Shown here: positions 9,557-61,684 of the stretch, in pieces
How the letters are laid out: each line of letters begins with the position of its first letter
Position numbering within the stretch: the first letter of the stretch is position 1
IMG/VR virus record: IMGVR_UViG_3300037297_000066
Coordinates: 248,001-312,000 of that record
Strand: one strand, 5' to 3'
DNA length: 64,000 bases
The notes under the pieces: generated by a model
Told to the model about the DNA's origin: nothing
The model's database searches: none
The model's input: only the letters and a program-made list of their open reading frames with translations
Translations under genes and position numbers: made by a program

Positions 9557-9634
9557 GCTCTCGGACCCCGTGGAAGGGGCGACGGATTCTAACCCCGTGT
9601 CAGAGTGAGGGTTCAACTCCCTCCGAGAGCGCCA
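9557..9634 (+). tRNA. tRNA-Sup(CUA), amber anticodon
   Basis: GCTCTCG/CGAGAGC acceptor, loop TT-CTA-AC, GAGGG-TTCAACT-CCCTC, ends GCCA. Confidence 0.75.
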
Positions 9635-9635
9635 T

Positions 9636-9714
9636 GGGGACGTAGCTCAGTGGTTGAGAGCGGCGAGCTCTAAACTCGTGTCTGTCGGGGGTTCGAGTCC
9701 CTCCGTCCTCACCA
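9636..9714 (+). tRNA. tRNA-Sup(CUA), amber anticodon
   Basis: GGGGACG/CGTCCTC, D-arm GCTC-AGTGGTTGA-GAGC, GCGAG-CT-CTA-AA-CTCGT, ends ACCA. Confidence 0.85.
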
Positions 9715-30192: not shown

Positions 30193-30278
30193 GGGGTCGG
30201 AATAGTTGGCTGGTGCCAACAGCGGTCTGTAAAACCGTTGTCTCTGACGGGGTGGTTCGATTCCACACGGCCCCACCA
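30193..30278 (+). tRNA. tRNA-Tyr(GTA)
   Basis: CT-GTA-AA, long variable arm, ACCA. Confidence 0.85.
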
Positions 30279-35042: not shown

Positions 35043-35091
35043 CCCCAGCAGACACACTTGGACGGTATGCCGTCCCGCCGTGTCGGGAGAG
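35043..35091 (+). promoter_or_regulatory. copy of the conserved RNA helix overlapping the RBS of the TROVE-like gene (putative autoregulatory operator)
   Basis: GACAC-ACTT-GGACGG-TATG-CCGTCC-CGCC-GTGTC directly before GGGAGAG-ATG. Confidence 0.6.
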
Positions 35092-37011
35092 ATGAAAATG
35101 GTAGACCAGGTACAGCGTGAGAACCTGGGTCCGGCAGAGCGTATCATCAACGTCCTGTTGACCTACGAGGACCACATGGTCCACAACCGGGTTGGGATCG
35201 TAGAGCCCGATCCAGACAGCCAGATCGGCCTTCGCTGGACCCAGGCAACTTGGGTCGAGAAGGACGGCAAGAAGGTTGTCTACAAGCTCCTCCCTGGGGC
35301 CCGGGGACGAAACGGAAAGACCACTCGGCGCAAGGTCGAAGTGGGCACTCTCTGGAACGACGGCACGGTTCGCAGTGCCGATCGTCGGAAGATCGGGGAG
35401 CTCCGTCAGCCTGGCCTCTTTCCCGAAGTGGCAGTCTGGATGTACCGACAGGTGGCTGAGATCTACAAGCTCGACAACGAGTTCTGTGCTCGTTGGGCCA
35501 GCTACGCTTACTCCCAGACCCACCGAGATCTGAAGGTGGTACTGGCGGCCTTCCTCCTGGTTCAGGCTCGCAAGGGTGACCCTGTGATGGACCAGGGCAA
35601 GGTAGCCTTCTTCGACGACGACTTCCGTGACGTGGGTGAGGCAATGTGCCTTCACTACGGTGGGAAGTCCGACAAGTCTGCTCTCGATGCGAAGCTTCTG
35701 CTCCGCATTCGGAAGATTCTGGAGGTCCCTGAGATCGCCCAGATCAACCGAGATCTTGGGTTCGGGAAGTCGGCTCGGAGGGCTTACCTGGGTCGTTGGC
35801 CCAGGGTCGTTCAGAAGTGGCTGAGATACCGGGAAGACAACCCGGTTCTGCTGCGGGGCTTGGTCAACAAGGGTGCTTTCCGAGCAACCGTACAGGACTT
35901 GGCTCAGCAGTCTCGGTACAGTCCGTCGAGCCCCCTCTTCTACCAGATCCTTCGGTGGCCTCAGAAGCAGGCTGACGGGGGACACCGGAAGATGGCTCTC
36001 GACCAGAAGGTGACCAAGCAGGAATCCTGGGCGGGTAAGACCGAACAGGAGATCTGCGAGATCATCACCAGTCAGAGGACTGGTTGGAAGCGTGTCACGA
36101 CTCTGGTTCCGTCAGAGATTGGGGTTACCCGAGCCATCATGGCAGCAGCTGTGGAGGCAGGGTCCCTCTCGGACAAGGACCTGATCAACCACACGCCACT
36201 TTTGGAAGAACTGGGCCTCTTGCAGGACCAGGACGTTCGGGGGCGTTGGGAGGCTGCGCTTCAGGCTGCCGAGGACCGTCGAGCTGCTAACGTGGCTCGT
36301 AACGTCAAGAGCCAGCAGACTCGTGAGCAACTCGAAGGGGCTGCTGACCAGTCTGTCCTGAAGGCTGTCGAAGAGGTGGCTACAGGGATTCGGGTCTTCT
36401 TCTGTGTGGACCGATCTTCCTCGATGGGTATCGCTATCGAGGCAGCCAAGGAGCACATCGAGAAGTTCTTGCCTGGGTTCCCGCCCGATCAGCTCTTCAT
36501 CTGTGCCTTCAACTCGTCTGCTCGGAAGGTGACTCTCAAGCAGCACTCGTCGGTTGGAGTTCGGGAAGCTTTCCGGGGCATGGTCGGCTCTGGAGGCACG
36601 GACTACGGTGCGGCTGTACGCTTCTTCTCGAAGCCCGAGTACATGCCAGCCGAGGAGGAGGTTTCGCTCTTCTTCTTCATCGGAGACGAAGCAGCGGACA
36701 CTCGTTCCTTGGTTCAGGCCGTTCGGAACTCGGATCTCAACATCGTGGCCTTCGCTCTGGTGAAGGTCGTGTCTCCCGGTTGGGACCCTGGACTCTGTGT
36801 TCAGGAAGCTGCAGCCCAGTTGGGTATCCCTGTGATCCCGATCGACGAGAAGGTGTTCTCGGACGTCTATGCGACCCCGAGGATCCTTCGTGACCTGATC
36901 GCAAATACGCCGGTAGCTCAGACCCCTGGTCACAGGGAGGTTCGGCGGGTGACCCTTCTGGACACCATTCTGGACACTGAGCTGCTCAAGAAGCCCCTGT
37001 GGGCTGCATGA
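35092..37011 (+). CDS. TROVE/Ro60-like RNA-binding protein with C-terminal vWA domain
   Basis: helical N-terminal region with TROVE-like pattern (LDAKLLLRI..YLGRWPRVVQKWL..FRATVQDLAQQSRYSP); MIDAS FCVDRSSSMG, GGTDYG and FIGDE. vWA is secure; TROVE is inferred. Confidence 0.7.
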   Translation: MKMVDQVQRENLGPAERIINVLLTYEDHMVHNRVGIVEPDPDSQIGLRWTQATWVEKDGKKVVYKLLPGARGRNGKTTRRKVEVGTLWNDGTVRSADRRKIGELRQPGLFPEVAVWMYRQVAEIYKLDNEFCARWASYAYSQTHRDLKVVLAAFLLVQARKGDPVMDQGKVAFFDDDFRDVGEAMCLHYGGKSDKSALDAKLLLRIRKILEVPEIAQINRDLGFGKSARRAYLGRWPRVVQKWLRYREDNPVLLRGLVNKGAFRATVQDLAQQSRYSPSSPLFYQILRWPQKQADGGHRKMALDQKVTKQESWAGKTEQEICEIITSQRTGWKRVTTLVPSEIGVTRAIMAAAVEAGSLSDKDLINHTPLLEELGLLQDQDVRGRWEAALQAAEDRRAANVARNVKSQQTREQLEGAADQSVLKAVEEVATGIRVFFCVDRSSSMGIAIEAAKEHIEKFLPGFPPDQLFICAFNSSARKVTLKQHSSVGVREAFRGMVGSGGTDYGAAVRFFSKPEYMPAEEEVSLFFFIGDEAADTRSLVQAVRNSDLNIVAFALVKVVSPGWDPGLCVQEAAAQLGIPVIPIDEKVFSDVYATPRILRDLIANTPVAQTPGHREVRRVTLLDTILDTELLKKPLWAA

Positions 37012-37019
37012 GGTGAAAC

Positions 37020-37958
37020 ATGGGTTGGAGAGATCTGCTTCAGACCGAGGATGAGACGTTCGTCTCCCCCTGGGTGGGAGGAAGGTCTCTCCGATCCTTC
37101 GATCGCTTCTGGCGTATCGAGGGAAAACTCCCTCAAGAGCATGGTTGGCATAGGTTCCGTCTGGCGGGCCGGAAGGCTTGTTGGACGGGGCCTGCTGATC
37201 AGTCTGGGGAGCTCAGGGATCGTCTGAGAGGCTACCTGGTAGCTGACCGACTCGTGCCAGATGAGGCTCGGGTCGAGACAGATCCAATCAAGCTGGCTCA
37301 GGGATTCGAGAGAGTTCACCTGATCGAGCCTGGTTTGGATCGGTTCGTTCGGGTAGTCGCTGGCCGGTCCTTCGAGGACGGCCCTCTCATCTACGACAGC
37401 CAGGAGTTCCCTCTTGGTCCCGAGGATGAGGTTCTTCAGGCATACTTCGACGAAGCCAAGTCTGTGGACCATGTCTCGGGGGTCGCCCCTGCTTTGGAGG
37501 CTGCGTTTCGTTTCGAATCGTGGCATCGGGAGGAGATCCGGCGGCGTCGAGAAGAGGAACGAAAGCGTCGGGAGGAAGAGGATCGGCAGCGTCAGTTGGA
37601 GGCTCGGAGACAGGAAATCATCGAGACTTTGGGGGATGCTGCTGGACGTCGGGAACTGGCTCGTTACGACTTTGCTGAGGCAGCCAGAGCTGCTTTGGCG
37701 GTAGGAGGAGCTCAGTACCTAGACTCTCGTCCCTCCTACAACAAGGGCGAGATGGTTGTTCGGTACCGGATGAACGGCCGGGGGTTGGAGTGCACTTGTG
37801 ACGCTCAGACCCTGAGGATCATCGATTCCGGCTGCTGTCTGACCAACCACGCCACTGGGGAGCAGACCGACACGAGGTTCACCCTGGAGTCACTTCCGGG
37901 GGTCATACAAGAAGCTGACCGTCGGCACATCTTGGTGGTGTATCGTCACGTAGACTGA
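37020..37958 (+). CDS. conserved hypothetical protein; C-terminal E2-like (UBC-fold) candidate
   Basis: coiled coil followed by IIDSGCCLT..FTLESLPGVIQEA, resembling the E2 GxICL..TLxxL pattern; operon context. Confidence 0.45.
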   Translation: MGWRDLLQTEDETFVSPWVGGRSLRSFDRFWRIEGKLPQEHGWHRFRLAGRKACWTGPADQSGELRDRLRGYLVADRLVPDEARVETDPIKLAQGFERVHLIEPGLDRFVRVVAGRSFEDGPLIYDSQEFPLGPEDEVLQAYFDEAKSVDHVSGVAPALEAAFRFESWHREEIRRRREEERKRREEEDRQRQLEARRQEIIETLGDAAGRRELARYDFAEAARAALAVGGAQYLDSRPSYNKGEMVVRYRMNGRGLECTCDAQTLRIIDSGCCLTNHATGEQTDTRFTLESLPGVIQEADRRHILVVYRHVD

Positions 37959-37966
37959 GAGGTACC

Positions 37967-38338
37967 ATGCAGGAATCAGGCGTTGTTTTGGATCTGAAGG
38001 AGCAGCCGATCTATTGGCACACCCCAGCGGATCGGACAACGGGGGCTATTCCTGACAGCCACACTCTGTGGGAGGTCCTCTGGGAGAATCGTGAAAACCT
38101 GTCTGGGTTTGCCCACAGTCATCCTGGCCGTGGGCTTCCCGGGCCATCCTACACGGATGTCACGACATTCTCCTCCATTGAGCGAGCTCTCGGAAAGAAG
38201 CTCAATTGGTGGATCACCAGCGAGGATCGGGTCGCCTTGGTCAGGTGGTTTGGTCCTGGGAAACACGACTACAAGGCACTTGCCGTAGAAGATGAACTGG
38301 TCTGGGTACCCAGACTGAGAGAACTTTCCTACCCTTAG
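37967..38338 (+). CDS. JAB/MPN metallo-isopeptidase
   Basis: N-terminal E and GFAHSHP..GPSYTDV (HxH-x7-S-x2-D). Confidence 0.85.
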   Translation: MQESGVVLDLKEQPIYWHTPADRTTGAIPDSHTLWEVLWENRENLSGFAHSHPGRGLPGPSYTDVTTFSSIERALGKKLNWWITSEDRVALVRWFGPGKHDYKALAVEDELVWVPRLRELSYP

Positions 38339-38366
38339 GGGTAGACACGAAGGAAGGTCAAATCAG

Positions 38367-38627
38367 ATGGCAATCGAAGAGCATGAAGCACGTGTGAACA
38401 TCACCTGGGCTCAGCAGAACGGCGATCTGCCGGACCCAGTGGCATTCGACGCAACGGATGCCAACATCCTGACCTGGGCCACCGAAGCCGTCCGTGGTGG
38501 AGATGTCCCTGGAATCGAAGCTGACCAGAACGCCGACTTCGACGGGTACGTTGTGGAGCGATTCGCCTCCAAGGAGGAAGTCCCCTACAACCGGCTCGTG
38601 GTTCGGCCGAAGGCAGAGTTTGGTTGA
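38367..38627 (+). CDS. ubiquitin-like (beta-grasp) protein candidate
   Basis: 86 aa, strand-strand-helix-strand pattern, ends LVVRPKAEFG; lies between JAB and ThiF. Confidence 0.65.
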   Translation: MAIEEHEARVNITWAQQNGDLPDPVAFDATDANILTWATEAVRGGDVPGIEADQNADFDGYVVERFASKEEVPYNRLVVRPKAEFG

Positions 38628-38669
38628 TAACCAGGTGGGTGGCCTTCGGGCCATCCGCTGTCACCCAAG

Positions 38670-39257
38670 ATGGAGATGAAGATGCAGACAGTGATGGTAG
38701 TGGGTGTGGGGGCCCTCGGATCCCACGCCATCCAATTCCTCCGAGGAGCAGCCCGGATTCGTGCCATCGACTTCGATCGGGTGGAGCAGAAGAATACCCT
38801 TTCTCAGTTTCACCCCAGGAATTCGGTGGGCAAGAACAAGGCCCAAGCCCTCCAGCAGGCGATGCAGTTCCTCTGGGGGATCAAGATCGAGGTCATTCCT
38901 CACAAGCTCGTTCAGGGCAACGCTCAGGTCGTTCTCAAGGGAGCGGACCTGGTTCTAGACTGCCTGGACAACGGGGCTTCCCGTGAGATCCTGCAGAAGG
39001 CTGTTCGGCAGGCCGGTATTCCGTGTCTTCATGGAGCTCTCTCTGCCGGGGGCATGTTCGGCCGGGTCATCTGGGACGATCTGTTCAATATCGACTACGA
39101 GTCTGGAGAAGGGATTGCCACTTGCGAGGATGGGGCTTTCCTGCCGTTCATCGGTCTGGTGAGCACCTACCTGGCTCGGAGCGCCCAAGCCTGGCTAGAA
39201 ACTGGGAAGCAGCTTAGCTTCCAGGTCTACCCTTCGGCCCCCGCCACCAGGATTTAG
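38670..39257 (+). CDS. ThiF/E1-like adenylyltransferase
   Basis: VVGVGALGS, IDFDRVEQKN, KNKAQAL and DLVLDCLDN motifs. Confidence 0.92.
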   Translation: MEMKMQTVMVVGVGALGSHAIQFLRGAARIRAIDFDRVEQKNTLSQFHPRNSVGKNKAQALQQAMQFLWGIKIEVIPHKLVQGNAQVVLKGADLVLDCLDNGASREILQKAVRQAGIPCLHGALSAGGMFGRVIWDDLFNIDYESGEGIATCEDGAFLPFIGLVSTYLARSAQAWLETGKQLSFQVYPSAPATRI

Positions 39258-39261
39258 GGGG

Positions 39262-39289
39262 TTGAAAACAAGCTCCAACGGTGTATAGT
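39262..39289 (+). promoter_or_regulatory. promoter-like TTGAAA-N16-TATAGT upstream of the tRNA-like RNA trio
   Basis: contains the GGTGTATAGT motif seen at 4 intergenic sites. Confidence 0.55.
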
Positions 39290-39361
39290 GCATCCGTTGG
39301 TTTCTGGAGAACATCGTGAGAAAGCTGGAATGAGACTTTGCCGGGTTTCGGCCCGGCTTCT

Positions 39362-39504
39362 GGGGCTTCACAGGGGATGTGGTTCCCCGCCTGTTTTTTG
39401 GAACAGGAGCATCAGCTCTACCCCGCCACCACACTCGGTTTCCTAGGAAACCCGCCGTAGTTGGCCTACAAGCATTACCGGTTCGACTCCGGGAAGCCCC
39501 GCCA
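39362..39504 (+). ncRNA. CCA-ended tRNA-like RNA with the conserved helix inserted in the variable region
   Basis: GGGGCTT/AAGCCCC-G-CCA; T-arm CCGG-TTCGACT-CCGG; ACTCGG-TTTCC-TA-GGAAA-CCCGCC. Confidence 0.75.
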
Positions 39505-39513
39505 CTCAAAAAC

Positions 39514-39649
39514 GCCGCTCTTGAGGCACGGTCGCCTCACTTTCCCTACAAGAAAGCTAAGCTAGCCCCGCATGTACACTCGGCCCTCTCGGGGGCCCGC
39601 CGTATGGTGCATACAAGCAATTCCGGTTCGACTCCGGAGAGCGGCGCCA
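39514..39649 (+). ncRNA. second CCA-ended tRNA-like RNA with the inserted conserved helix
   Basis: GCCGCTC/GAGCGGC-G-CCA; D-arm TGAGGC/GCCTCA; ACTCGG-CCC..GGG-CCCGCC. Confidence 0.75.
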
Positions 39650-39777
39650 GGACATCCCGCAGGAACGTGCCTACACGCATACAGCTCAATTGGTAGAGCA
39701 TCGGATTCCTATTCCGAGGGTTGGGGGTTCAAATCCCCCTATGTGACCTTCCTACCGCACCTCCACTCGGATGTCCT
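39649..39777 (+). ncRNA. conserved helix enclosing a tRNA-Arg(CCT) body (39676-39746)
   Basis: AGGACATCC/GGATGTCCT stem; inner TCGGA-TT-CCT-AT-TCCGA, no CCA. Confidence 0.7.
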
Positions 39778-39877
39778 AATCTCTTAATCCCAAGCCCCCA
39801 GGAGAAGATCTCCTGCGTGTGGCTAAGGGACACCTTCTAGGGGTTCATGATCAATCTACTTGTTGGGACTGTTGATC

Positions 39878-40264
39878 ATGGAATCCTACGACTATGATCG
39901 GAGCGTGGCAGCAGGAACTCTCAAGCCGTGGGGTGATAGCTTGGTTCAGTGGATGGAGTCTTTGTCCAAGCAGGTGATCGATGTGGTCGCCAAGAGCCGG
40001 AAGTTTCGTGGCCTCAAGCTAAACTCCAGATCCTACGAGGGGAGAGGCAGAGAAGACCTGATCATGGGGATGGACCCCAAGACGGGAAAGCCCGTCAGTG
40101 TGAAGTCTTACGTTTACTTCTCTCCCGAGGATGCTCAGGTACGGGCCCGAGTGGTTCATAGTAGGGACCGAGAGATGGATATTGTGGTAGACCGGACCAT
40201 CGGTTTCCGGGAGTCCTCAAATCCAGTGATCCAGGAAGTTTCAAAGTACTTCGCTGCAGCCTGA
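39878..40264 (+). CDS. hypothetical protein with YDYDR motif
   Basis: MESYDYDRSVAAG. Confidence 0.7.
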   Translation: MESYDYDRSVAAGTLKPWGDSLVQWMESLSKQVIDVVAKSRKFRGLKLNSRSYEGRGREDLIMGMDPKTGKPVSVKSYVYFSPEDAQVRARVVHSRDREMDIVVDRTIGFRESSNPVIQEVSKYFAAA

Positions 40265-40269
40265 TAGTG

Positions 40270-41067
40270 ATGGCCTACGATTACGACCGTCGAGAAGCAG
40301 CTCGTCCCATCCCCATCAACAAGGGGATGGTCCAGAACACGGCTGACAAGATCATCCGGGAGCTCCCGAAGCACATGAAGTTTCGGGATCTATCCAGCCC
40401 GTTGTACATGACCCGAGGCTGGACTCCCAAGTGGGGTTTTTACGTGGGCGTCTACGAGACGACTGATGTCCAGGGATACCCTGTCAACGTCCCGGTGGAA
40501 GTGGGTTCCAAGTCTACGGTGGTTTGGGACAGCCCCCGTAGGTGGGTGGACGGAGGAGCCGTTAAAAGCCGTTACCGAGCGGATGGGAAGGGTAAGGCCA
40601 AAGGGTACGGTTCCAAATGGGCTCTTCGGATCAACTTCAACTCGAATCGCTCTCCCCAGGACATTCTGGACAACCTTTCCGGGGTTAAGCGAGAGCTGAT
40701 CTCGGTCCTATCCCATGAGGTGACCCATCTCCGAGATCTTCTTCGGCACAAAGGGGATGCTCATGAGGATTCACCTGACGCTGTTGAGAGGTACTACAAT
40801 GAGCCTACCGAGCTCCGAGCTTTCATGCGGCAGGTGGTTGACGAGGTCCTCGCTCATGCTGACGAGGTTGGTCGGGACACCGAGGGTTTCGGACTCTACC
40901 TGAACAACAACTTCGTGGACCGAGCTCTAGAAAGTTCAGCTACTTGGGACCGGATTCGAAAGCACTTGTTTCCGAAGAATCGGAATCTACTCCTCAAGGC
41001 AGTAGTCAGGTCTTTGCAAGATGCTTGGCCTGGGCTACAACGCAAGTATCCTGTCGAGGAAATCTGA
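40270..41067 (+). CDS. YDYDR-motif protein with HExxH (putative metallopeptidase)
   Basis: MAYDYDRREAA; LSHEVTHL..YYNEPTELRAF. Confidence 0.65.
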   Translation: MAYDYDRREAARPIPINKGMVQNTADKIIRELPKHMKFRDLSSPLYMTRGWTPKWGFYVGVYETTDVQGYPVNVPVEVGSKSTVVWDSPRRWVDGGAVKSRYRADGKGKAKGYGSKWALRINFNSNRSPQDILDNLSGVKRELISVLSHEVTHLRDLLRHKGDAHEDSPDAVERYYNEPTELRAFMRQVVDEVLAHADEVGRDTEGFGLYLNNNFVDRALESSATWDRIRKHLFPKNRNLLLKAVVRSLQDAWPGLQRKYPVEEI

Positions 41068-41109
41068 TGTTCGCTTTTCGCAGATTGCAGGAAGTCATGC
41101 TCACGCCGG

Positions 41110-41310
41110 TTGCGCCGGCAGGAGGACTTCATGCATCACAAGAGAAGACGCCCCAAGAATCGACGTGCTGGTTGTCTGTTCTGTAAGCCGCACAAGATGA
41201 ACGGAATCAGTAAGCTGGGTCAAACCAAGCCTAGTCTGTGTAGGACCCTTCAAGAAGACTTTTCGGGTCGTGCGCCGCATGGGTACTACCTCACGAAGTT
41301 GGGCAAGTGA
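41110..41310 (+). CDS. small basic Cys-containing protein
   Basis: HHKRRRPKNRRAGCLFCKPHK. Confidence 0.5.
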   Translation: MRRQEDFMHHKRRRPKNRRAGCLFCKPHKMNGISKLGQTKPSLCRTLQEDFSGRAPHGYYLTKLGK

Positions 41311-41665
41311 AGTTGTTGGATTCTATTCTCGCCCTTTGGTCTGGGATCACTACCGAGCCGGTGACGCCGGCAGGAGGATCCCATGCACTTCAAGAGACGC
41401 AGACGTAAGCGAGGCGGTCACAAGGGTTGTTGTGGAATGTGTTGTCTCCGGACCACGGATGGGCGACGCAACGGACGACGGATGACCCTTCAAGAACAAG
41501 CATCAGTCTTCGACATGCTTCAGCAGATCGAGGATCTAGAGCTGGTTTGCCGGCCCCGGATCCCCGTCCTTCATGGCTACTACCTTGGTGGTCAGACCCC
41601 GGTCCACGTTCTGAAAGTCGTCAGAGAGATTGAAACTGGGGAGTGGGATGATAGAATCCTGACCC

Positions 41666-41953
41666 ATGGCAGTGACGACCTGCTTCTACATCGAGCCTCC
41701 GTTGAGACAGCGCATCCTGACCTACGTGGAGTACCACAGGTGGAGCAGCGCTTCTCAAGTGGCGAAGGCTCTGAAGGAAAAGACTAGCTCCGTCGCTTCG
41801 ATTCTGAAGAAGATGGCGGATCAGGGAACTCTGGTCCGAAAGGATGGGTATGGGCCCCGAGGTGGCTACGGTTACAGTCTTCCGGGACCCAGCTCTCAAC
41901 CTCTCACCTGTTGGGAGAGGGTCCTGGAGGATTGGGTACCGTTTGGAGAGTGA
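41666..41953 (+). CDS. winged-HTH protein (C-terminal TCWERVL)
   Basis: SASQVAKALKEKTSSVASILKKMADQGTLVR. Confidence 0.7.
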   Translation: MAVTTCFYIEPPLRQRILTYVEYHRWSSASQVAKALKEKTSSVASILKKMADQGTLVRKDGYGPRGGYGYSLPGPSSQPLTCWERVLEDWVPFGE

Positions 41954-42029
41954 ACCAGATAGGTTCTGGGCCTGCCTGGAAAGCAGAGTGCAGTCGCAAG
42001 GCTGTGGGGATCGAGACCTCCGCTCTCCG
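41945..42029 (+). tRNA. tRNA-Ser(GGA), atypical T-loop ATCGAGA
   Basis: CT-GGA-AA, long variable arm, G73. Confidence 0.8.
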
Positions 42030-45044: not shown

Positions 45045-45503
45045 TTGACGATCGACGGGGTGTTGTGGCATTGTTCGTTCGTGTCCCAACTCGGTGACAT
45101 TCTGAAGTCTCCGAATGCCGTGGAGACGTTGGCGGTCTTTCGGACCAGAACCTTCAGGTACGAAGACTTGTTCGAGTTGTTCGAGGACCTGAAGGGGTTG
45201 TTCGTTCTTGGGTATACCGCCTTATGGTCAGATAGGCCCCCTGATTACGGTATAATAGCGTACAAGGGGGAAGGTGACGAAGAGTCGTCTGTGGATCTGC
45301 AGATTTCATTTAAAGAGGTCAGAGCTCTTCGACTTCAGGACACGCCGGAACACACTACTCTTGTAAGGGCTTTTCAGACTTCCGAAGGTAAACGACTGTT
45401 GTTGGAAGCTCTTCGGGAGAAGGCTCTTTCCACTCCTAAGGAAGATCCTGTACCCTTACCTACTTGCTGGGAACGGCTCCTAGCACAAGACACGCCCTCG
45501 TAG
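45045..45503 (+). CDS. hypothetical protein (C-terminal TCWERLL); start uncertain
   Basis: 152-aa ORF. Confidence 0.6.
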   Translation: MTIDGVLWHCSFVSQLGDILKSPNAVETLAVFRTRTFRYEDLFELFEDLKGLFVLGYTALWSDRPPDYGIIAYKGEGDEESSVDLQISFKEVRALRLQDTPEHTTLVRAFQTSEGKRLLLEALREKALSTPKEDPVPLPTCWERLLAQDTPS

Positions 45504-49141: not shown

Positions 49142-49609
49142 GTGGAAATCGAGAGAAAGTGGCGTCTGAAAACCCTACCCAGTCGTACCTTGTTCGAGTC
49201 TTGGGCCATGCTGGAGCAGGCTTACTTGATCTCTTCCGATGGGGAGCTTCGAGTCAGGCGTTTCGGAGACGACTTTTTCCTTACGATCAAAGGTCCAGGA
49301 TCTATTGTCCGTAGGGATTGGGAAAAACCGATCCCTGCGTGGGCATACCTTTTGGTCCAGAAACATTGTGTTGGCAGTCTGATCACAAAGACCCGCTACT
49401 TCTCTGAGAATTCTAAGATTGAAGTAGACGAATACCACGGACATCTTGAGGGTCTGGTGATCCTAGAATGTGAGTTTCCTAGCTTGGAAAAGGCAGAGGA
49501 GTTCGAGTTTCCTGGTTGGGCTGGAGAGGCTGTGGAGGTGACAGAGGAACCTGCCTACAAGAACAAGAACTTAGCTCTGCTGAAATCTGTTCCAGTTTGG
49601 CCCGAGTGA
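49142..49609 (+). CDS. CYTH (triphosphate tunnel) domain protein
   Basis: EIERKWRL, EQAYL, LRVRR, LTIKG, KTRY, EVDEY, ECEF and YKNKNL motifs. Confidence 0.9.
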   Translation: MEIERKWRLKTLPSRTLFESWAMLEQAYLISSDGELRVRRFGDDFFLTIKGPGSIVRRDWEKPIPAWAYLLVQKHCVGSLITKTRYFSENSKIEVDEYHGHLEGLVILECEFPSLEKAEEFEFPGWAGEAVEVTEEPAYKNKNLALLKSVPVWPE

Positions 49610-49625
49610 AGTTTCGGGCTTACAC

Positions 49626-49701
49626 GCCCCAGTAGCTCAAAGGATAGAGCACCGGCCTTCGAAGCCGTTGGTTGCAGGTTCGACTCCTGCCTGGGGTACC
49701 A
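49626..49701 (+). tRNA. tRNA-Arg(TCG)
   Basis: CT-TCG-AA, ACCA. Confidence 0.9.
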
Positions 49702-49706
49702 CACTT

Positions 49707-49779
49707 CCCCTCGTCCCGCCGGAATGCGGGCACAGGTCTACGAAATCTGTTGGTCTCGGTTCGACTCCGAGCGGGGGGT
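49707..49779 (+). tRNA. tRNA-Arg(ACG)
   Basis: CT-ACG-AA. Confidence 0.78.
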
Positions 49780-54877: not shown

Positions 54878-55260
54878 GGGGCCGATTTGGTTTCGACAGA
54901 GGCATGGAGGTTGTAGTTGCGAGCAGAGGCGCTCGGCCCTTTCCAAAACCGAGCCGTAAATAGCTGCAAACGATAATGCAATCGCTGATCAGGCCATCGC
55001 AGCCTGAAAGCCGTCCGACCTTGAGATAGCCTTGGTAAAGGAAGGACGTCAGCACTAAGGCCACTGGACCACAAGGATTGCCTAACCACTTGTGATCGAC
55101 ATTGCAGAATGGCTTTGACGGGCGAGATTCCCGGAACCTCAGAAAGGCAGCCAGCGGCCTCCTGAGTTTTGAACATCCCCTTGGGGACTAGTTGGCTACG
55201 CTCGTGAATGAGGCTACAAGCAAAGGTTTCTGGAACCGGGTTCGAGTCCCGGCGGCTCCA
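54878..55260 (+). ncRNA. ssrA: tmRNA; tag peptide ANDNAIADQAIAA
   Basis: GGGGCCG..TTTCGAC 5' end, G3:U70 acceptor CGGCTCC-A, T-arm CCGGG-TTCGAGT-CCCGG; tag ORF 54966-55007. Confidence 0.92.
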
Positions 55261-55351
55261 CTAAGCAATTTCAAGTCCTGTCAAGGTGTCTGAGCGTCTC
55301 TGATGCTCACTTGTAGGAGTGCTATGAAAAAGCTGAAACGATAGGTGTACC

Positions 55352-56604: not shown

Positions 56605-58032
56605 ATGGAGATCCAAGCACGTTTCGCACACACCAAGCTCAACAACTCTCAAGACAACGAGACCTTCCTCGTACTCACGCTCACGGCCCCCAAGATTGAC
56701 TGGCTGGAGAAGAGGCCGGACATTTCCGTGCTTCCGGTCATTGACGTCTCTGGATCCATGACCGGTCCCAAGCTGGAATATGCCCAGAAGTCGGCCCTCA
56801 AGTTGGTGGAGCATCTTAAGCCCGGGGATGTTTCTGGGCTAGTAGTGTTCTCCAACGGTGTGAATGTTCTAGTCCCCCCCGGGCCAGTCACGGCTGAACA
56901 GAAGGATCGACTTCGGAACGCTATTTCCAAGCTGAAGGCTTCTGGAGGCACCAACTTTGCCGAGGCCATGAGTCGATCTTTGGAGTTGGTCCAGAATCTG
57001 GACCTGCCTCCTAAGTACAACCCTCGGGTCATCATGTTCACTGATGGGGAGCCCACGGTTGGAATCACGGACAACAACGCCATCCTCAGGATACTGGCAG
57101 AGAGCCGGGCCCAGGTGACGGTGAGTGCCTTCGGGTATGGGGCCGGCGGAGTATGGGGTGGTTGTGACCAGGACTTCCTGACGGCGTTTGCCAAGCAAGG
57201 AGCTGGGAACTACGCTTATATCAAGGAGCCTGACGCCGCTCTGAGTGCTTTTGGGAAGGAACTAGGGGGGCTCCTCTCGACCTACGCCACAGACCTTTCG
57301 GTAGATGTGGAGCCCTTGGCTGGGCATCGGGTTGTGGAGGTGGTTTCCGACGTGGATGCACACGAGACTGATGTGACTGGTTTGCTAGAGGTCACGCTGC
57401 CGGACATTTTGGCTGAGGAGGCCCGGCACATCGTTCTCAAGGTTCAGACCAAGGCTGGGAAGGCCGGGCCCCGTGCAGTCAATCTGTTCGATGTCGAAGC
57501 TTCTTACCTGGTCATCACAGAGGAAGGGAAGAAAGTAGAGCAGAAGGTTTCTACCAAGGCCAAGCTTCGGTTCCATTCCGGGGACAACGAGAAGAACCCT
57601 GACAAGGTACTGTCCGAGGTTATTGGGTTGGCCCAGTTGGTTCAGGCCCAACTCAAGGCTGAGGAGAAAGCCAACGACGGGGATTACACGGGAGCGGCCG
57701 GGGTGATGCAGAATGCTCACCAACTGGAGTACATCAGCGAGAACTCCGGGCTTTCGGCCTTGGCAGGCAACATCCAGGACAGGGTTGCCTCTTCCCAAAT
57801 GTATGCTTCAAGTGCAGGTTACCGTCGGAGCACTCACATGGCGGGAACTCGGGCCTATGGAGTGGTTGGGATGGATGCCGGGGCTTCGGCTGATCTGGCG
57901 GGGTCTACCTGCTTCATGAGCTTCGACAATGAGGCGAGGGGAGCTCTGGCGGATTCCTTTCAGGCGGACTCGGGGGTAAAGGTGGAGGGTCTGGGGACCA
58001 TCCACAAGACGTCCAGCGGTAAGCGTTGGTGA
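56605..58032 (+). CDS. vWA domain protein (YfbK-like)
   Basis: VIDVSGSM, GGTNF, MFTDGEP and GAGNYAYI motifs. Confidence 0.9.
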   Translation: MEIQARFAHTKLNNSQDNETFLVLTLTAPKIDWLEKRPDISVLPVIDVSGSMTGPKLEYAQKSALKLVEHLKPGDVSGLVVFSNGVNVLVPPGPVTAEQKDRLRNAISKLKASGGTNFAEAMSRSLELVQNLDLPPKYNPRVIMFTDGEPTVGITDNNAILRILAESRAQVTVSAFGYGAGGVWGGCDQDFLTAFAKQGAGNYAYIKEPDAALSAFGKELGGLLSTYATDLSVDVEPLAGHRVVEVVSDVDAHETDVTGLLEVTLPDILAEEARHIVLKVQTKAGKAGPRAVNLFDVEASYLVITEEGKKVEQKVSTKAKLRFHSGDNEKNPDKVLSEVIGLAQLVQAQLKAEEKANDGDYTGAAGVMQNAHQLEYISENSGLSALAGNIQDRVASSQMYASSAGYRRSTHMAGTRAYGVVGMDAGASADLAGSTCFMSFDNEARGALADSFQADSGVKVEGLGTIHKTSSGKRW

Positions 58033-58239
58033 GTTCGTAGGGGGCGTGAGTTTTGGCTCTCGCCCCCTACCCTTTTGGTGTACTATCCTCGGGTATGAAG
58101 TGCCCGAAGTGTGGGAGTACCAACGTCAAGGGATTGATGGTGTTCGATCCTGACTGGCGTGCAGGTCACTCCAAGTGTCGGGATTGTTGCTTCATAGACC
58201 ATTGGACTTGTTTTTGCGAACCTCCTTGGAGGCTGACCG

Positions 58240-59646
58240 TTGTCCCTAAAGTACGCAGCCCAGAAGGTGAGTGACGGCCACTACGTGTTGCCCAAAGTGG
58301 CAACCATGAAGGTCGAAGTTCACGCCTTTCTTTCGGAAGCCCTCTATGAGGCTTCTGAGGAGCAGGTGTGGGATCAGGCTCGGAATGCCGCTTCCTATGA
58401 GGGAGTGGTGGGGGCCTATCTGATGCCGGATACCCACACTGGGTTTGGGGTACCCATCGGGGGTGTGGTGGTGACAGAAGACACCCTCATTCAAGCCGGA
58501 TCGGGATATGACATCTCGTGTGGGGTGCTCTACATGAAGGTATCGGGGCTTTCTGCCAAGGGTACTCGTGGTAGGTACAACCGAGAGCGTTGGATCACCG
58601 AGGTGGAGAAACGTGTGGCGTTGGGAGTGGGATCCAAGCGCCCCAAGCTGATGCCCCAGTTCTCCCCAGCGTTGTTGGAGAGTATCTTCCGATATGGGGC
58701 CAAACCTCTTGGGACGAAGCCTGATGTATGCGAAAGGCAGTACATTCCGGTTCCCGAAGGCACAGACTTCACCAAGATCGAGAAAGCCTATGAGAAAGCC
58801 CTGCCCCAGCTCGGATCTCTAGGGGGCGGCAACCATTTCATTGAGATGCAAGTGGACGAGGCCACCGGGGATGTTTGGGTCATGATCCATTGCGGGTCCC
58901 GGGGTTATGGTTGGCAGACAGCCAACCACTACTTCTACGAGGGAGCCCAGCTTCGAGGTCTCAGGAAGAACCAACGGGAATCTTCTTGGCTGAGAATCGA
59001 CGAGCCCTTGGGTAGGGAATATTGGGCCTACCACAATTCGGCAGCCAACTATGCCATCGCCAATCGCCACACCATCGTTTCCGGCGTCCAGGAGGCCCTA
59101 GGAGAGGTTTTTGGGGCTGAGGCGGAGGTCTACTACGAAATCAGTCACAACCTCGTACAAGAGGAAACTCTGGTCCTTCCCGACGGAACTACAAAGCGAG
59201 GGTTCGTGCATCGGAAAGGGGCCACCCGAGCCTTTCCGGCCGGGCATCCTGATTTGGTAGGTACCAAGTGGGAGCCGACGGGGCACCCGTGTTTGATTCC
59301 GGGGTCGATGTTCTCAGGGGCTGCCATTCTCTTTGCCGAACCTCAGGCCCATCAGTCGGCTTGTTCGGTCAACCATGGGTCTGGCCGGGTGCTCGCTCGG
59401 GGGCAGGCCAAAAGGAAGCTTCATCACAAGCAGCAACGAATCGACGACCAGATGCGGACGGTCAAACGTCGGTTGGGGGGCGTCGAAGTAGAGGGCATCG
59501 TAGGCAATAGCAAGCACACGCCTTTGGACGAATGTGGAGAGGTCTACAAGGATCTGGACGAGGTGCTTGTCGTTTTGCAGCAGACAGGTATTGCAAGAGT
59601 CGCTCATCGTCTTTACCCTGTGGCGAACCTCAAGGGAACGGACTGA
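58240..59646 (+). CDS. rtcB: RNA ligase RtcB
   Basis: MPDTHTGFGVPIGG, GYDISCG, LGSLGGGNHF, IHCGSRG, HNLV, HRKGATRA, PGSM and HGSGR motifs. Confidence 0.96.
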   Translation: MSLKYAAQKVSDGHYVLPKVATMKVEVHAFLSEALYEASEEQVWDQARNAASYEGVVGAYLMPDTHTGFGVPIGGVVVTEDTLIQAGSGYDISCGVLYMKVSGLSAKGTRGRYNRERWITEVEKRVALGVGSKRPKLMPQFSPALLESIFRYGAKPLGTKPDVCERQYIPVPEGTDFTKIEKAYEKALPQLGSLGGGNHFIEMQVDEATGDVWVMIHCGSRGYGWQTANHYFYEGAQLRGLRKNQRESSWLRIDEPLGREYWAYHNSAANYAIANRHTIVSGVQEALGEVFGAEAEVYYEISHNLVQEETLVLPDGTTKRGFVHRKGATRAFPAGHPDLVGTKWEPTGHPCLIPGSMFSGAAILFAEPQAHQSACSVNHGSGRVLARGQAKRKLHHKQQRIDDQMRTVKRRLGGVEVEGIVGNSKHTPLDECGEVYKDLDEVLVVLQQTGIARVAHRLYPVANLKGTD

Positions 59647-59658
59647 CTCGACTCAGGC

Positions 59659-61684
<2,026 letters not shown>

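What the first reader, a model, noticed from the sequence alone, without database searches (positions are those of the whole stretch)
39649..39777. A tRNA-Arg(CCT) body clamped inside the conserved helix
Seen: AGGACATCC-CGCA..GTGC on the 5' side and GCAC..ACTC-GGATGTCCT on the 3' side enclose a normally ordered tRNA (39676-39746) with canonical D, anticodon (TT-CCT-AT) and T arms, a 6-bp acceptor and no CCA. A separate normal tRNA-Arg(CCT) exists at 45494. Inference: a third topology, either a caged tRNA released on processing or a bait for anticodon nucleases tethered to the TROVE protein.
Basis: partly seen in the sequence, partly recalled or inferred. Interest (0 to 1): 0.68.

Follow-up and report, generated by a model that had tools for sequence, protein, structure and literature searches.

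The report
tRNA-shaped RNA clamped by Ro-linked stem
The "caged tRNA-Arg" is real, but it is one member of a conserved family of about 135-nt tRNA-mimic RNAs in huge phages, always encoded beside a Ro60-like gene cassette, and it is probably a new form of Y RNA, not a decoding tRNA.

Summary
At 39649-39777 a tRNA cloverleaf (ARAGORN/Rfam, 39675-39748, anticodon CCT) lies inside a perfect 9-bp leader/trailer helix and a second 4-bp stem.

The clamp is not chance. A covariance model finds 45 full-length relatives in 34 loci of 370-620 kb phages. All 9 clamp pairs show compensatory changes. Only 2 of 567 ordinary tRNAs in the same loci have a comparable helix.

Across the family the L-shape nucleotides and the anticodon-loop frame are kept. 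The anticodon triplet is free: 27 triplets, 12 with A34, and Ser/Leu anticodons on short-arm bodies. The acceptor stem ranges from 3 to 9 bp. The window copy lacks A20, which both genuine phage Arg tRNAs keep. A tRNA released for decoding is therefore unlikely.

The RNA always flanks a conserved five-gene cassette. Its first gene (35080-37011) folds like Ro60: TROVE-like helical domain plus vWA. The same stem module, closed as a hairpin, sits in the two tRNA-like RNAs just upstream.

Best reading: a Y-RNA-like partner of the Ro-like protein, in a new topology. Binding and RNA ends are untested, because no RNA data exist. A nuclease-bait role is not excluded.

The parts
39649..39657 (+). Helix 1, 5' strand (AGGACATCC). 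The innermost C pairs with G39769.
   Evidence: Sequence. All 9 pairs covary in 45 relatives, and the innermost C-G is kept in 43 of 45.
39658..39666 (+). Internal loop, 5' side (CGCAGGAAC). GGA at 39662-39664 can pair with TCC at 39762-39764.
   Evidence: The same CGC junction follows the hairpins of RNAs A and B.
39667..39670 (+). Stem 2, 5' strand (GTGC).
   Evidence: All 4 pairs show compensatory changes and 96% of cells are paired.
39671..39675 (+). 5' linker CTACA. It holds the ACA of the family-invariant ACA[A/C]G signature; the G is at 39677.
   Evidence: Invariant columns of alignment A2. The same YACAAGC signature occurs in the hairpin-type RNAs.
39675..39748 (+). tRNA-like cloverleaf. 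Acceptor 39676-39681 with 39740-39745 (6 bp, A1xA72). D arm 39684-39699. Anticodon arm 39701-39717, with CCT at 39708-39710. Variable loop 39718-39722. T arm 39723-39739.
   Evidence: ARAGORN. Rfam tRNA 57.6 bits. Family statistics on tertiary nucleotides.
39747..39756 (+). 3' linker (CCTTCCTACC), single-stranded. No CCA.
   Evidence: A39754 varies (A>T) in an independent sediment metagenome without touching a helix.
39757..39760 (+). Stem 2, 3' strand (GCAC).
39761..39768 (+). Internal loop, 3' side (CTCCACTC), ending in the invariant CTC at 39766-39768.
   Evidence: CTCG is invariant in alignment A2.
39769..39777 (+). Helix 1, 3' strand (GGATGTCCT).
39513..39649 (+). Upstream tRNA-like RNA B. 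It has an 8-bp acceptor, a T arm and an encoded CCA. The same module is closed as a hairpin (ACTC-6 bp-tetraloop-CGCC) at the anticodon-arm position. Its CCA abuts helix 1 of the clamped RNA.
   Evidence: This tandem arrangement is seen in 33 of 45 relatives.
39362..39504 (+). Upstream tRNA-like RNA A. Same build as B, ending in GCCA.
39262..39289 (+). Sigma-70-like promoter (TTGAAA, 16 nt spacer, TATAGT) in front of the A-B-C RNA array.
   Evidence: Consensus scan, 10 of 12 matches. Not tested.
35080..37011 (+). Ro60-like protein, 643 aa: N-terminal beta domain, TROVE-like helical domain, C-terminal vWA with a DxSxS MIDAS motif.
   Evidence: Foldseek top 13 hits are Ro60/TROVE. For the helical domain alone, the top 3 of 48,161 chains are Ro60 at Z 10.9, 8.8 and 7.7. 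Pfam sees only the vWA domain.
37020..39257 (+). Rest of the conserved cassette. A 312-aa protein (37020-37958). A 123-aa protein with an HSHP...S..D motif (37967-38338). An 86-aa protein ending in FG (38367-38627). An E1/ThiF-like adenylyltransferase (38670-39257).
   Evidence: The gene order is conserved in about 60 loci.

Best explanation
The element is one copy of a conserved family of structured noncoding RNAs of about 130-140 nt in huge phages. A complete tRNA-shaped cloverleaf is joined by short single-stranded linkers at its acceptor end to a two-part stem. That stem consists of stem 2, a large internal loop ending in an invariant CUC, and a sequence-variable helix 1 formed by the RNA's 5' and 3' ends.

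The cloverleaf is a tRNA mimic, not a decoder. The stem module is a protein-docking site shared with the neighbouring hairpin-type tRNA-like RNAs. The most likely partner is the Ro60-like (TROVE-like plus vWA) protein of the adjacent cassette. On this reading the RNA works like a Y RNA: the stem holds the Ro-like ring, and the tRNA-shaped module presents a tRNA surface to a tRNA-recognising factor or competes with tRNAs.

Shown: the structure, its conservation, the lack of decoding constraint, and the genomic linkage.

Inferred: that the whole 129-nt form is the mature RNA, that its 5' end is made by 3' processing of the upstream tRNA-like RNA, and that it binds the Ro-like protein.
For: Structure and conservation:
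- The RNAalifold consensus on a plain MAFFT alignment of 26 copies recovers the outer helix, with compensatory changes at 8 of 9 pairs.
- On 45 copies, 97% of cells are paired, all 9 helix-1 pairs and all 4 stem-2 pairs have double changes, 0 of 500 shuffles reach the observed values, and slid controls pair only 30-46%.
- The covariance model gives 67-131 bits for full-length family members. Ordinary tRNAs score 61 bits or less, mostly as matches to the tRNA part alone.

Not a decoder:
- There are 27 different anticodon triplets in 42 seven-nt loops, 12 of them with A34.
- Ser and Leu anticodons sit on bodies with a 4-5-nt variable loop.
- The acceptor is only 3 bp in 12 copies.
- The window copy has C8, A1xA72 and no A20, whereas the genuine Arg(CCT) and Arg(TCT) tRNAs keep GGATA.

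Still tRNA-shaped:
- U8-A14 in 36 of 45, D-loop GG in 41 of 45, and a TTCRANY T loop in most copies.
- Positions 15-48 are complementary in 30 of 45.
- Loop frame: C32 in 31 of 42, U33 in 34 of 42, R37 in 39 of 42.

Linkage:
- There is one copy in the 437-kb genome, 2.6 kb downstream of the Ro-like gene.
- Ten other phage records searched whole, six of them rated 100% complete, carry 0-2 copies each. All copies but one lie on the gene's strand within about 10 kb; the exception is at 21 kb.
- The RNA sits directly after the E1-like gene in most of the loci that carry it, or directly before the Ro-like gene in 7 loci.

Ro-like fold.

Shared module with RNAs A and B, and with 54 hairpin-type relatives.

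Precedent: phage Ro60 proteins bind phage-encoded Y-like RNAs, and bacterial Y RNAs carry tRNA-like domains (PMC4201824, PMC12135203).
Against: - No RNA data exist for this uncultivated phage. All runs that hold it are DNA metagenomes. The mature ends and even expression are therefore unknown.
- No binding test was possible.
- The stem lacks the GNCGAAN0-1G / CGAA motif of known Ro-binding modules, and Rfam finds no Y-RNA family here.
- Helix 1 is free in sequence, unlike the base-specifically read helix of animal Y RNAs.
- The Ro-like assignment rests on predicted structure. TM-scores are modest, Z for a helical repeat is below 13, and Pfam's TROVE model does not hit.
- In most loci the RNA is closer to the E1-like gene than to the Ro-like gene, so the partner could be another cassette protein.
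- Many family members keep an NCCA- or NCA-like string after the acceptor, so RNase P recognition or nicking cannot be excluded.
Confidence: 0.58

Rival explanations
1. Bait or decoy. The RNP displays an intact anticodon stem-loop to soak up or sense host anticodon nucleases. The triplet diversifies in an arms race. The clamp protects the ends or tethers the decoy to the Ro-like protein.
For: The loop frame (7 nt, C32, U33, R37, A38) is conserved while the triplet is hypervariable. The context is a 52-tRNA array with tmRNA and RtcB ligase, the kind of gene set linked to tRNA damage and repair (PMC7824862, PMC7790460).
Against: A free triplet is also what plain absence of decoding constraint predicts. 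No nuclease or target specificity is known. There are only 1-2 copies per genome, so a sponge effect would need high expression. Nothing here distinguishes diversifying selection from drift.
Confidence: 0.15
2. Caged precursor. The helix is a leader/trailer processing stem, of the RNase III type or one that promotes RNase P/Z as at MALAT1-mascRNA. A functional tRNA-Arg(CCU) is released.
For: The window copy has a good cloverleaf score (57.6 bits) and a 6-bp acceptor. Many relatives carry NCCA-like strings after the acceptor. Leader-trailer pairing that aids RNase P is known for mascRNA (PMC8457004). M. smegmatis YrlA is cut by RNase P and receives CCA (PMC4201824).
Against: Acceptor stems of 3 bp occur in 12 family members. 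Anticodons are random, including Ser and Leu on class-I bodies. A20, the ArgRS identity base kept by the genuine Arg tRNAs, is missing, and position 1-72 is A opposite A. A normal tRNA-Arg(CCT) already exists at 45494. The invariant ACA..G, CUC and stem 2 are unnecessary for a plain processing stem. Ordinary tRNAs of the array lack such helices.
Confidence: 0.07
3. Stability or termination element only. Helix 1 closes the last RNA of the ncRNA operon, acts as a 3' protective stem or intrinsic terminator, and has no protein partner.
For: In relatives helix 1 is often followed within 2-8 nt by a T run, and T makes up 40% of the 14 nt after it. The RNA array has its own promoter-like site.
Against: The window copy has no T run after the helix. 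In L005 further RNAs follow the clamped one. A terminator does not explain the invariant CUC, the ACA..G, stem 2, or the reuse of the same module as an internal hairpin in the other RNAs.
Confidence: 0.08
4. Substrate or cofactor of the E1-like/small-protein/JAMM-like part of the cassette, not of the Ro-like protein. For example, the RNA could be acted on at the anticodon loop or at an end by an adenylating enzyme.
For: In most of the loci that carry it, the RNA array starts directly after the E1-like gene. E1-like enzymes include tRNA-modifying members; TcdA and Uba4 appear among the hits.
Against: In 7 loci the RNAs sit upstream of the Ro-like gene, 4-6 kb from the E1-like gene. There is no precedent for such chemistry on a clamped RNA. 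The JAMM-like and ubiquitin-like assignments rest on a motif and a C-terminal glycine only.
Confidence: 0.07

Closest known systems
YrlA-type bacterial and phage Y RNAs (Chen et al. 2014, PMC4201824; Wang et al. 2018 preprint 10.1101/312249)
   Same: Encoded beside a Ro60-type gene, often several RNAs in tandem. Modular build: a stem formed by the RNA's two ends plus a tRNA-mimicking domain with conserved D- and T-loop nucleotides and a covarying 15-48 pair.
   Different: YrlA has no anticodon arm, because the Ro-binding stem takes its place. Its acceptor stem is closed by a loop, and its stem carries GNCGAAN0-1G. Here the cloverleaf is complete, including a 7-nt anticodon loop. The stem is attached at the acceptor end through linkers, the CGAA motif is absent, and the conserved signatures are CUC and ACA[A/C]G. 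No Rfam Y-RNA model matches.
Yrl1/Yrl2 of Thermus phage phiLo with phage Ro60 (PMC12135203)
   Same: Phage-encoded Ro60-type protein with phage-encoded stem-bulge-stem RNAs next to the gene. The phiLo Ro60 structure (9kop, 9l5y) is among the best structural matches of the window's 643-aa protein.
   Different: The phiLo RNAs are described as a stem flanking a large bulge with CGAA, with no cloverleaf. The window protein is 643 aa with an extra N-terminal beta domain, and it sits in a cassette with an E1-like gene.
Leader-trailer helices around tRNA-like structures (MALAT1-mascRNA, PMC8457004)
   Same: Sequences 5' and 3' of a tRNA-like fold pair with each other and extend from the acceptor end.
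   Different: There the pairing is short and serves RNase P cleavage, releasing a small RNA. Here there is a long two-part stem with invariant loop nucleotides, and a family in which the acceptor can be 3 bp.
The hairpin-type tRNA-like RNAs A and B of the same locus (39362-39504, 39513-39649)
   Same: Same module: stem 2, xCUC, a helix closed by G-C, a short junction (CGC in this genome), stem 2', then YACAAGC. Same neighbourhood in relatives.
   Different: In A and B the module is capped by a tetraloop and occupies the anticodon-arm position of an otherwise open tRNA-like RNA with a CCA end. In the clamped RNA the module is open-ended and sits on the acceptor end of a full cloverleaf.

Membership tests
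Canonical decoding tRNA (tRNA-Arg) | Cloverleaf with conserved D-loop and T-loop tertiary nucleotides | tested here: met
   Rfam tRNA 57.6 bits and an ARAGORN call. GG and TTCAAAT are present, but C8 replaces U8.
Canonical decoding tRNA (tRNA-Arg) | 7-bp acceptor with a usable 3' end (discriminator plus CCA, encoded or addable) | tested here: not met
   The window copy has 6 bp with A1xA72 and no CCA. In the family 12 copies have only 3 bp and the others 5-9 bp with mismatches.
Canonical decoding tRNA (tRNA-Arg) | Anticodon conserved among orthologues, and body type matching the amino acid | tested here: not met
   27 triplets in 42 loops, 12 with A34. Ser and Leu anticodons sit on bodies with a 4-5-nt variable loop.
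Canonical decoding tRNA (tRNA-Arg) | ArgRS identity nucleotide A20 (established for E. coli tRNA-Arg; from background knowledge) | tested here: not met
   The D loop reads ..GGTA, whereas the phage's Arg(CCT) and Arg(TCT) tRNAs read ..GGATA.
Canonical decoding tRNA (tRNA-Arg) | Mature species of about 75 nt made by RNase P and 3' processing, and aminoacylated | not testable with these tools
   No RNA run holds this phage.
Y RNA / YrlA family | Encoded next to a Ro60 (TROVE) gene | tested here: met
   It lies 2.6 kb downstream of a Ro60-like gene. The linkage is kept in 34 loci and in 9 of 10 further phage records searched whole. The Ro-like call comes from predicted structure.
Y RNA / YrlA family | A stem formed by the 5' and 3' ends of the RNA | tested here: inconclusive
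   The helix is proven by covariation. Whether its strands are the mature RNA ends cannot be tested without RNA data.
Y RNA / YrlA family | Conserved Ro-binding sequence (GNCGAAN0-1G / CGAA; bulged helix) | tested here: not met
   No conserved CGAA. The invariants are CUC and ACA[A/C]G. The motif definition is from PMC4201824 and PMC12135203.
Y RNA / YrlA family | tRNA-like domain of D arm, T arm and closed acceptor stem-loop, with the stem in place of the anticodon arm | tested here: not met
   A full cloverleaf with an anticodon arm, and the stem on the acceptor end.
Y RNA / YrlA family | Match to the curated covariance models | tested here: not met
   Rfam 15 at E up to 10 over 38000-41500 gives only tRNA.
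Y RNA / YrlA family | Physical binding to Ro60 | not testable with these tools
   No tool here models RNA-protein binding.
Ro60/TROVE protein (for the 643-aa neighbour) | Helical-repeat ring followed by a vWA domain with MIDAS | tested here: met
   Foldseek top 13 hits are all Ro60/TROVE over 530-600 columns at E about 1e-8. For the helical domain alone the top 3 of 48,161 chains are Ro60: Z 10.9 with 245 residues aligned at 3.7 A, then Z 8.8 and Z 7.7. D444xSxS is invariant.
Ro60/TROVE protein (for the 643-aa neighbour) | Sequence-level match to the TROVE family | tested here: not met
   Precomputed Pfam on more than 100 homologues lists only vWA families. There is no PDB sequence hit and no NCBIfam or PHROG hit.
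RNase III-type processing stem | About two turns of near-continuous double strand flanking the product | tested here: inconclusive
   9 bp plus 4-7 bp, separated by a 9 x 8 nt internal loop. Cleavage is not testable.

The most novel reading that the evidence does not exclude
The huge-phage cassette makes a counter-defence particle. A divergent Ro-like ring grips the clamp of a full tRNA decoy whose anticodon loop is tuned, phage by phage, to the host's anticodon nucleases. The E1-like, small-protein and JAMM-like genes regulate the particle. This would give Y-RNA tRNA mimicry a concrete function.
Probability: 0.12. Interest if true: 0.85.

Novelty: new variant of a known kind. Interest (0 to 1): 0.66.

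Why it matters
What the tRNA-like domains of bacterial Y RNAs are for remains an open question. This family offers a natural variant in which the mimic is a whole cloverleaf. It has a conserved anticodon-loop frame, a free triplet, and a docking stem moved to the acceptor end. It occurs in dozens of huge phages, beside a very divergent Ro60-like protein that sequence models miss.

It gives clear, testable constructs: the clamp, the CUC loop and the anticodon loop. It extends Ro/Y-RNA biology to 400-kb phages that carry their own tRNA sets, tmRNA and RtcB.

It also warns annotators that the tRNA calls inside these elements should not be counted as decoders. ARAGORN assigned them 27 different anticodons.

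Tried and rejected
- Rfam at gathering and at E up to 10 gave no Y-RNA or other family besides tRNA.
- Megablast of 36000-42000 against deposited phages gave no match.
- NCBIfam, PHROGs, PADLOC and PDB sequence searches of the 643-aa, 312-aa, 123-aa and 86-aa proteins gave nothing useful, apart from the E1-like gene. The protein atlas had no hit for the 312-aa protein.
- Leader/trailer duplex energy does not separate the element from ordinary tRNAs on its own.
- The G3-U70 pair seen in the window and in L005 looked like an alanine identity mark. It is not conserved in the family, so the idea was dropped.
- The idea that the junction sequence (CGC or AGC) always matches between hairpin-type and clamped RNAs of one genome holds for the window and L005 but not generally.
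- The hit at 49592-49727 (60.8 bits) is a normal tRNA-Arg(TCG) with a similar leader and no clamp.
- An exact-pattern scan of viral contigs for the 5' signature plus D arm returned mostly ordinary tRNAs. It added only one further copy, on a contig already known to carry the Ro-like gene. L145 was a false hit. It therefore does not test whether the RNA occurs without the cassette.
- No RNA-seq run holds the phage. Laying DNA contigs showed only strain differences outside the helices.
- A BHB splice motif and a retron-like reading were considered. Both were dropped because no matching bulge-helix-bulge geometry was seen and none of the cassette genes examined looks like a reverse transcriptase.

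Full report
**Setting.** The window is bases 248001-312000 of a 437,331-bp phage record with direct terminal repeats, rated complete. It carries 52 tRNA calls and a tmRNA, an RtcB ligase, a vWA protein and a GroEL-like gene. DNA of the same phage occurs in wetland and marine-sediment metagenomes. No RNA library holds it.

**The observation.**
- A perfect 9-bp inverted repeat (39649-39657 with 39769-39777) and a 4-bp stem (39667-39670 with 39757-39760) enclose a cloverleaf.
- ARAGORN calls the cloverleaf tRNA-Arg(CCT) at 39675-39748. Rfam scores it at 57.6 bits with position 1-72 unpaired.
- The minimum-free-energy fold keeps the clamp (z = -2.8).
- Thermodynamics alone is weak evidence. The leader/trailer duplex energy is the best of 53 tRNAs, but only by 0.6 kcal/mol.
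- The case for reality comes from relatives.

**Relatives.**
- The 643-aa gene upstream (35080-37011) has more than 1,300 homologues, many on contigs of 370-620 kb. I fetched 64 loci around it from viral contigs.
- I scanned every ARAGORN tRNA in these loci for leader/trailer helices. A recurrent class appeared: a helix of 8-14 bp whose 5' strand ends 16-20 nt before the tRNA, and whose 3' strand starts 17-27 nt after it and is preceded by CTC.
- A plain MAFFT alignment of 26 such elements gives an RNAalifold consensus containing the outer helix. Compensatory changes occur at 8 of its 9 pairs, and the innermost C-G pair is invariant.
- A covariance model built from this alignment finds 45 full-length copies in 34 loci at 67-131 bits; the window copy scores 113 bits. 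Ordinary tRNAs reach at most 61 bits, mostly as matches to the tRNA part alone.
- On the 45 copies, 97% of cells are paired and all helix-1 and stem-2 pairs show double changes. None of 500 shuffles reaches the observed values, and sliding the partner by 1-3 columns drops pairing to 30-46%.
- Only 2 of 567 ordinary tRNAs in the same loci have 8 or more Watson-Crick leader/trailer pairs at similar offsets.
- The clamp is therefore a selected structure.

**What the cloverleaf is.** The family keeps the nucleotides that build the tRNA L-shape:
- U8-A14 in 36 of 45 copies, D-loop GG in 41 of 45, and a TTCRANY T loop in most.
- A 4-5-nt variable loop, and complementary 15-48 in 30 of 45.
- A canonical anticodon-loop frame: 7 nt in 42 of 45, C32 in 31 of 42, U33 in 34 of 42, a purine at 37 in 39 of 42, A38 in 34 of 42.

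The features that make a tRNA a decoder are not kept:
- The triplet is free: 27 triplets in 42 loops, 12 starting with A, and Ser and Leu anticodons on bodies without a long variable arm.
- The acceptor stem is only 3 bp in 12 copies. In the rest it is 5-9 bp, often with a mismatch.
- The window copy has C8, A opposite A at 1-72, and no CCA.
- It also lacks A20. That base is a known ArgRS identity element in E. coli (background knowledge), and both genuine phage Arg tRNAs at 45494 and 49054 keep it.
- I conclude that the body is a tRNA mimic. Release of a working tRNA-Arg is unlikely.

**The stem module and the 'conserved helix'.**
- Two invariant signatures frame the module. CTC lies immediately 5' of the 3' strand of helix 1. 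ACA[A/C]G lies between stem 2 and the body.
- The two RNAs just upstream, A (39362-39504) and B (39513-39649), are tRNA-like RNAs with an open acceptor stem, a T arm and an encoded CCA.
- At the anticodon-arm position they carry the same module closed by a tetraloop: stem 2, ACTC, a 6-bp helix, CGCC, stem 2', then YACAAGC.
- L005 has four such RNAs around its clamped copy. A motif scan finds 54 in the loci (that scan presupposes the motifs).
- One module therefore occurs in two topologies within one locus.
- In 33 of 45 cases the clamped RNA starts 0-3 nt after the 3' end of a hairpin-type RNA. In the window B's CCA ends at 39649. This suggests that 3' processing of the upstream RNA creates the 5' end of the clamp. 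This is an inference.
- A sigma-70-like promoter at 39262-39289 precedes the array.

**The neighbour.**
- The 643-aa protein has no TROVE hit in Pfam, NCBIfam, PHROGs or PDB sequence searches.
- Its AlphaFold model (pLDDT 81) has Ro60/TROVE structures as its 13 best Foldseek matches, over 530-600 columns at E about 1e-8. vWA-only hits come behind these.
- The helical domain was folded alone and compared with 48,161 PDB representatives without Foldseek. Its three best matches are the three Ro60 representatives: Xenopus Z 10.9 (245 residues, 3.7 A), Deinococcus Z 8.8, and phage phiLo Z 7.7. The next chain scores 6.4.
- Together with the C-terminal vWA and its invariant DxSxS, this is a divergent Ro60-like protein.
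- It heads a cassette kept in the same order in about 60 loci: Ro-like, a 312-aa protein, a 123-aa protein with an HSHP...S..D motif, an 86-aa protein ending in FG, and an E1/ThiF-like enzyme. The JAMM-like and ubiquitin-like readings of the two small proteins are unverified.
- The clamped RNA lies directly after the E1-like gene in most of the loci that carry it, or directly before the Ro-like gene in 7 loci.
- Its own genome has a single copy.
- In five further records whose fetched 6-kb flanks showed no copy, four carry 1-2 copies. Six of these seven copies lie 6.5-9 kb from the gene on its strand, and one lies at 21 kb. The fifth record (73% complete) has none.
- Five other records have no additional distant copies.

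**Interpretation.**
- The best-supported model is a Y-RNA-like ribonucleoprotein. The terminal stem with its CUC loop docks a cassette protein, most likely the Ro-like ring. The tRNA-shaped module provides a tRNA surface.
- Precedents are bacterial YrlA RNAs and the phiLo phage Ro60 with its Yrl RNAs (PMC4201824, PMC12135203). Jumbo-phage TROVE proteins have also been noted in the context of RNA repair (PMC7824862).
- Membership in the YrlA family proper fails on three tested points: no CGAA-type motif, a different topology, and no Rfam hit. I therefore file it as a new variant of the kind, not as a member.
- The bait idea remains open. A conserved loop frame with a hypervariable triplet is what a decoy under an arms race would look like, but it is equally what a loop free of decoding constraint looks like.
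- A caged precursor, a mere terminator or stability stem, and a link to the E1-like enzyme instead of the Ro-like protein are less likely, for the reasons given under rivals.
- Nothing about expression, RNA ends or binding could be tested here.

Noticed in passing
39362-39504 and 39513-39649: Two tandem tRNA-like RNAs with an open 8-bp acceptor, a T arm (CCGGTTCGACTCCGG) and encoded GCCA/CCA. At the anticodon-arm position they carry the hairpin ACTC-6 bp-tetraloop-CGCC, followed by YACAAGC. They look like an unpermuted counterpart of YrlA. 54 similar RNAs were seen in related loci.
   Followed up: partly
35080-39257: A five-gene cassette kept in the same order in about 60 huge-phage loci: Ro60-like/vWA, a 312-aa protein with an Arg/Glu-rich helix, a 123-aa protein with an HSHPG..PGPS..D (JAMM-like) motif, an 86-aa protein ending in FG (possibly ubiquitin-like), and an E1/ThiF-like enzyme. 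I found no paper that describes a Ro-like protein coupled to an E1-like system.
   Followed up: partly
9557-9634 and 9636-9714: Two adjacent tRNAs with anticodon CUA, labelled Pyl by ARAGORN; one scores 61 bits with the Rfam tRNA model. They may be amber suppressors. I did not check whether the phage reads TAG as sense.
   Followed up: no
54878-55263: A phage-encoded tmRNA (Rfam 116 bits) with tag peptide ANDNAIADQAIAA.
   Followed up: no
56605-61684: A second vWA protein (475 aa, vWA at the N-terminus) directly upstream of an RtcB RNA ligase (58240-59646) and a GroEL-like chaperonin (59963-61684).
   Followed up: no
49592-49727: A normal tRNA-Arg(TCG) is preceded by CTTACAC and followed by ..CCTCG, which resembles the family's linker signatures. 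It scores 60.8 bits with the family model but has no clamp helix.
   Followed up: yes
window tRNA array 30193-54043: About half of the tRNAs do not encode CCA. Many of these end in ..CAC or ..TAC followed by TA. This suggests dependence on a CCA-adding enzyme.
   Followed up: no
30193-30278: ARAGORN calls this 86-nt tRNA Tyr(GTA). The best Rfam hit is the tRNA-Sec model, just above threshold (49.3 against 47 bits).
   Followed up: no
L008:2916-2990: A tRNA-Arg(CCT) in a related phage has a perfect 9-bp leader/trailer helix (CCGAATCCG/CGGATTCGG) at offsets 26 and 20, but it lacks the family signatures and the model does not call it a member.
   Followed up: no
3' flanks of family members, e.g. 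L048:5044-5060, L053:245-258, L031:11024-11036: In many relatives helix 1 is followed by a TAAY..TTTT-like T-rich tract (40% T in 14 nt). The window copy has no T run. This could be a terminator or a single-stranded 3' tail.
   Followed up: partly
39754, 39786, 39806: A strain of the same phage in an independent marine-sediment metagenome differs at these positions. The only difference inside the element (39754 A>T) lies in the unpaired 3' linker.
   Followed up: yes
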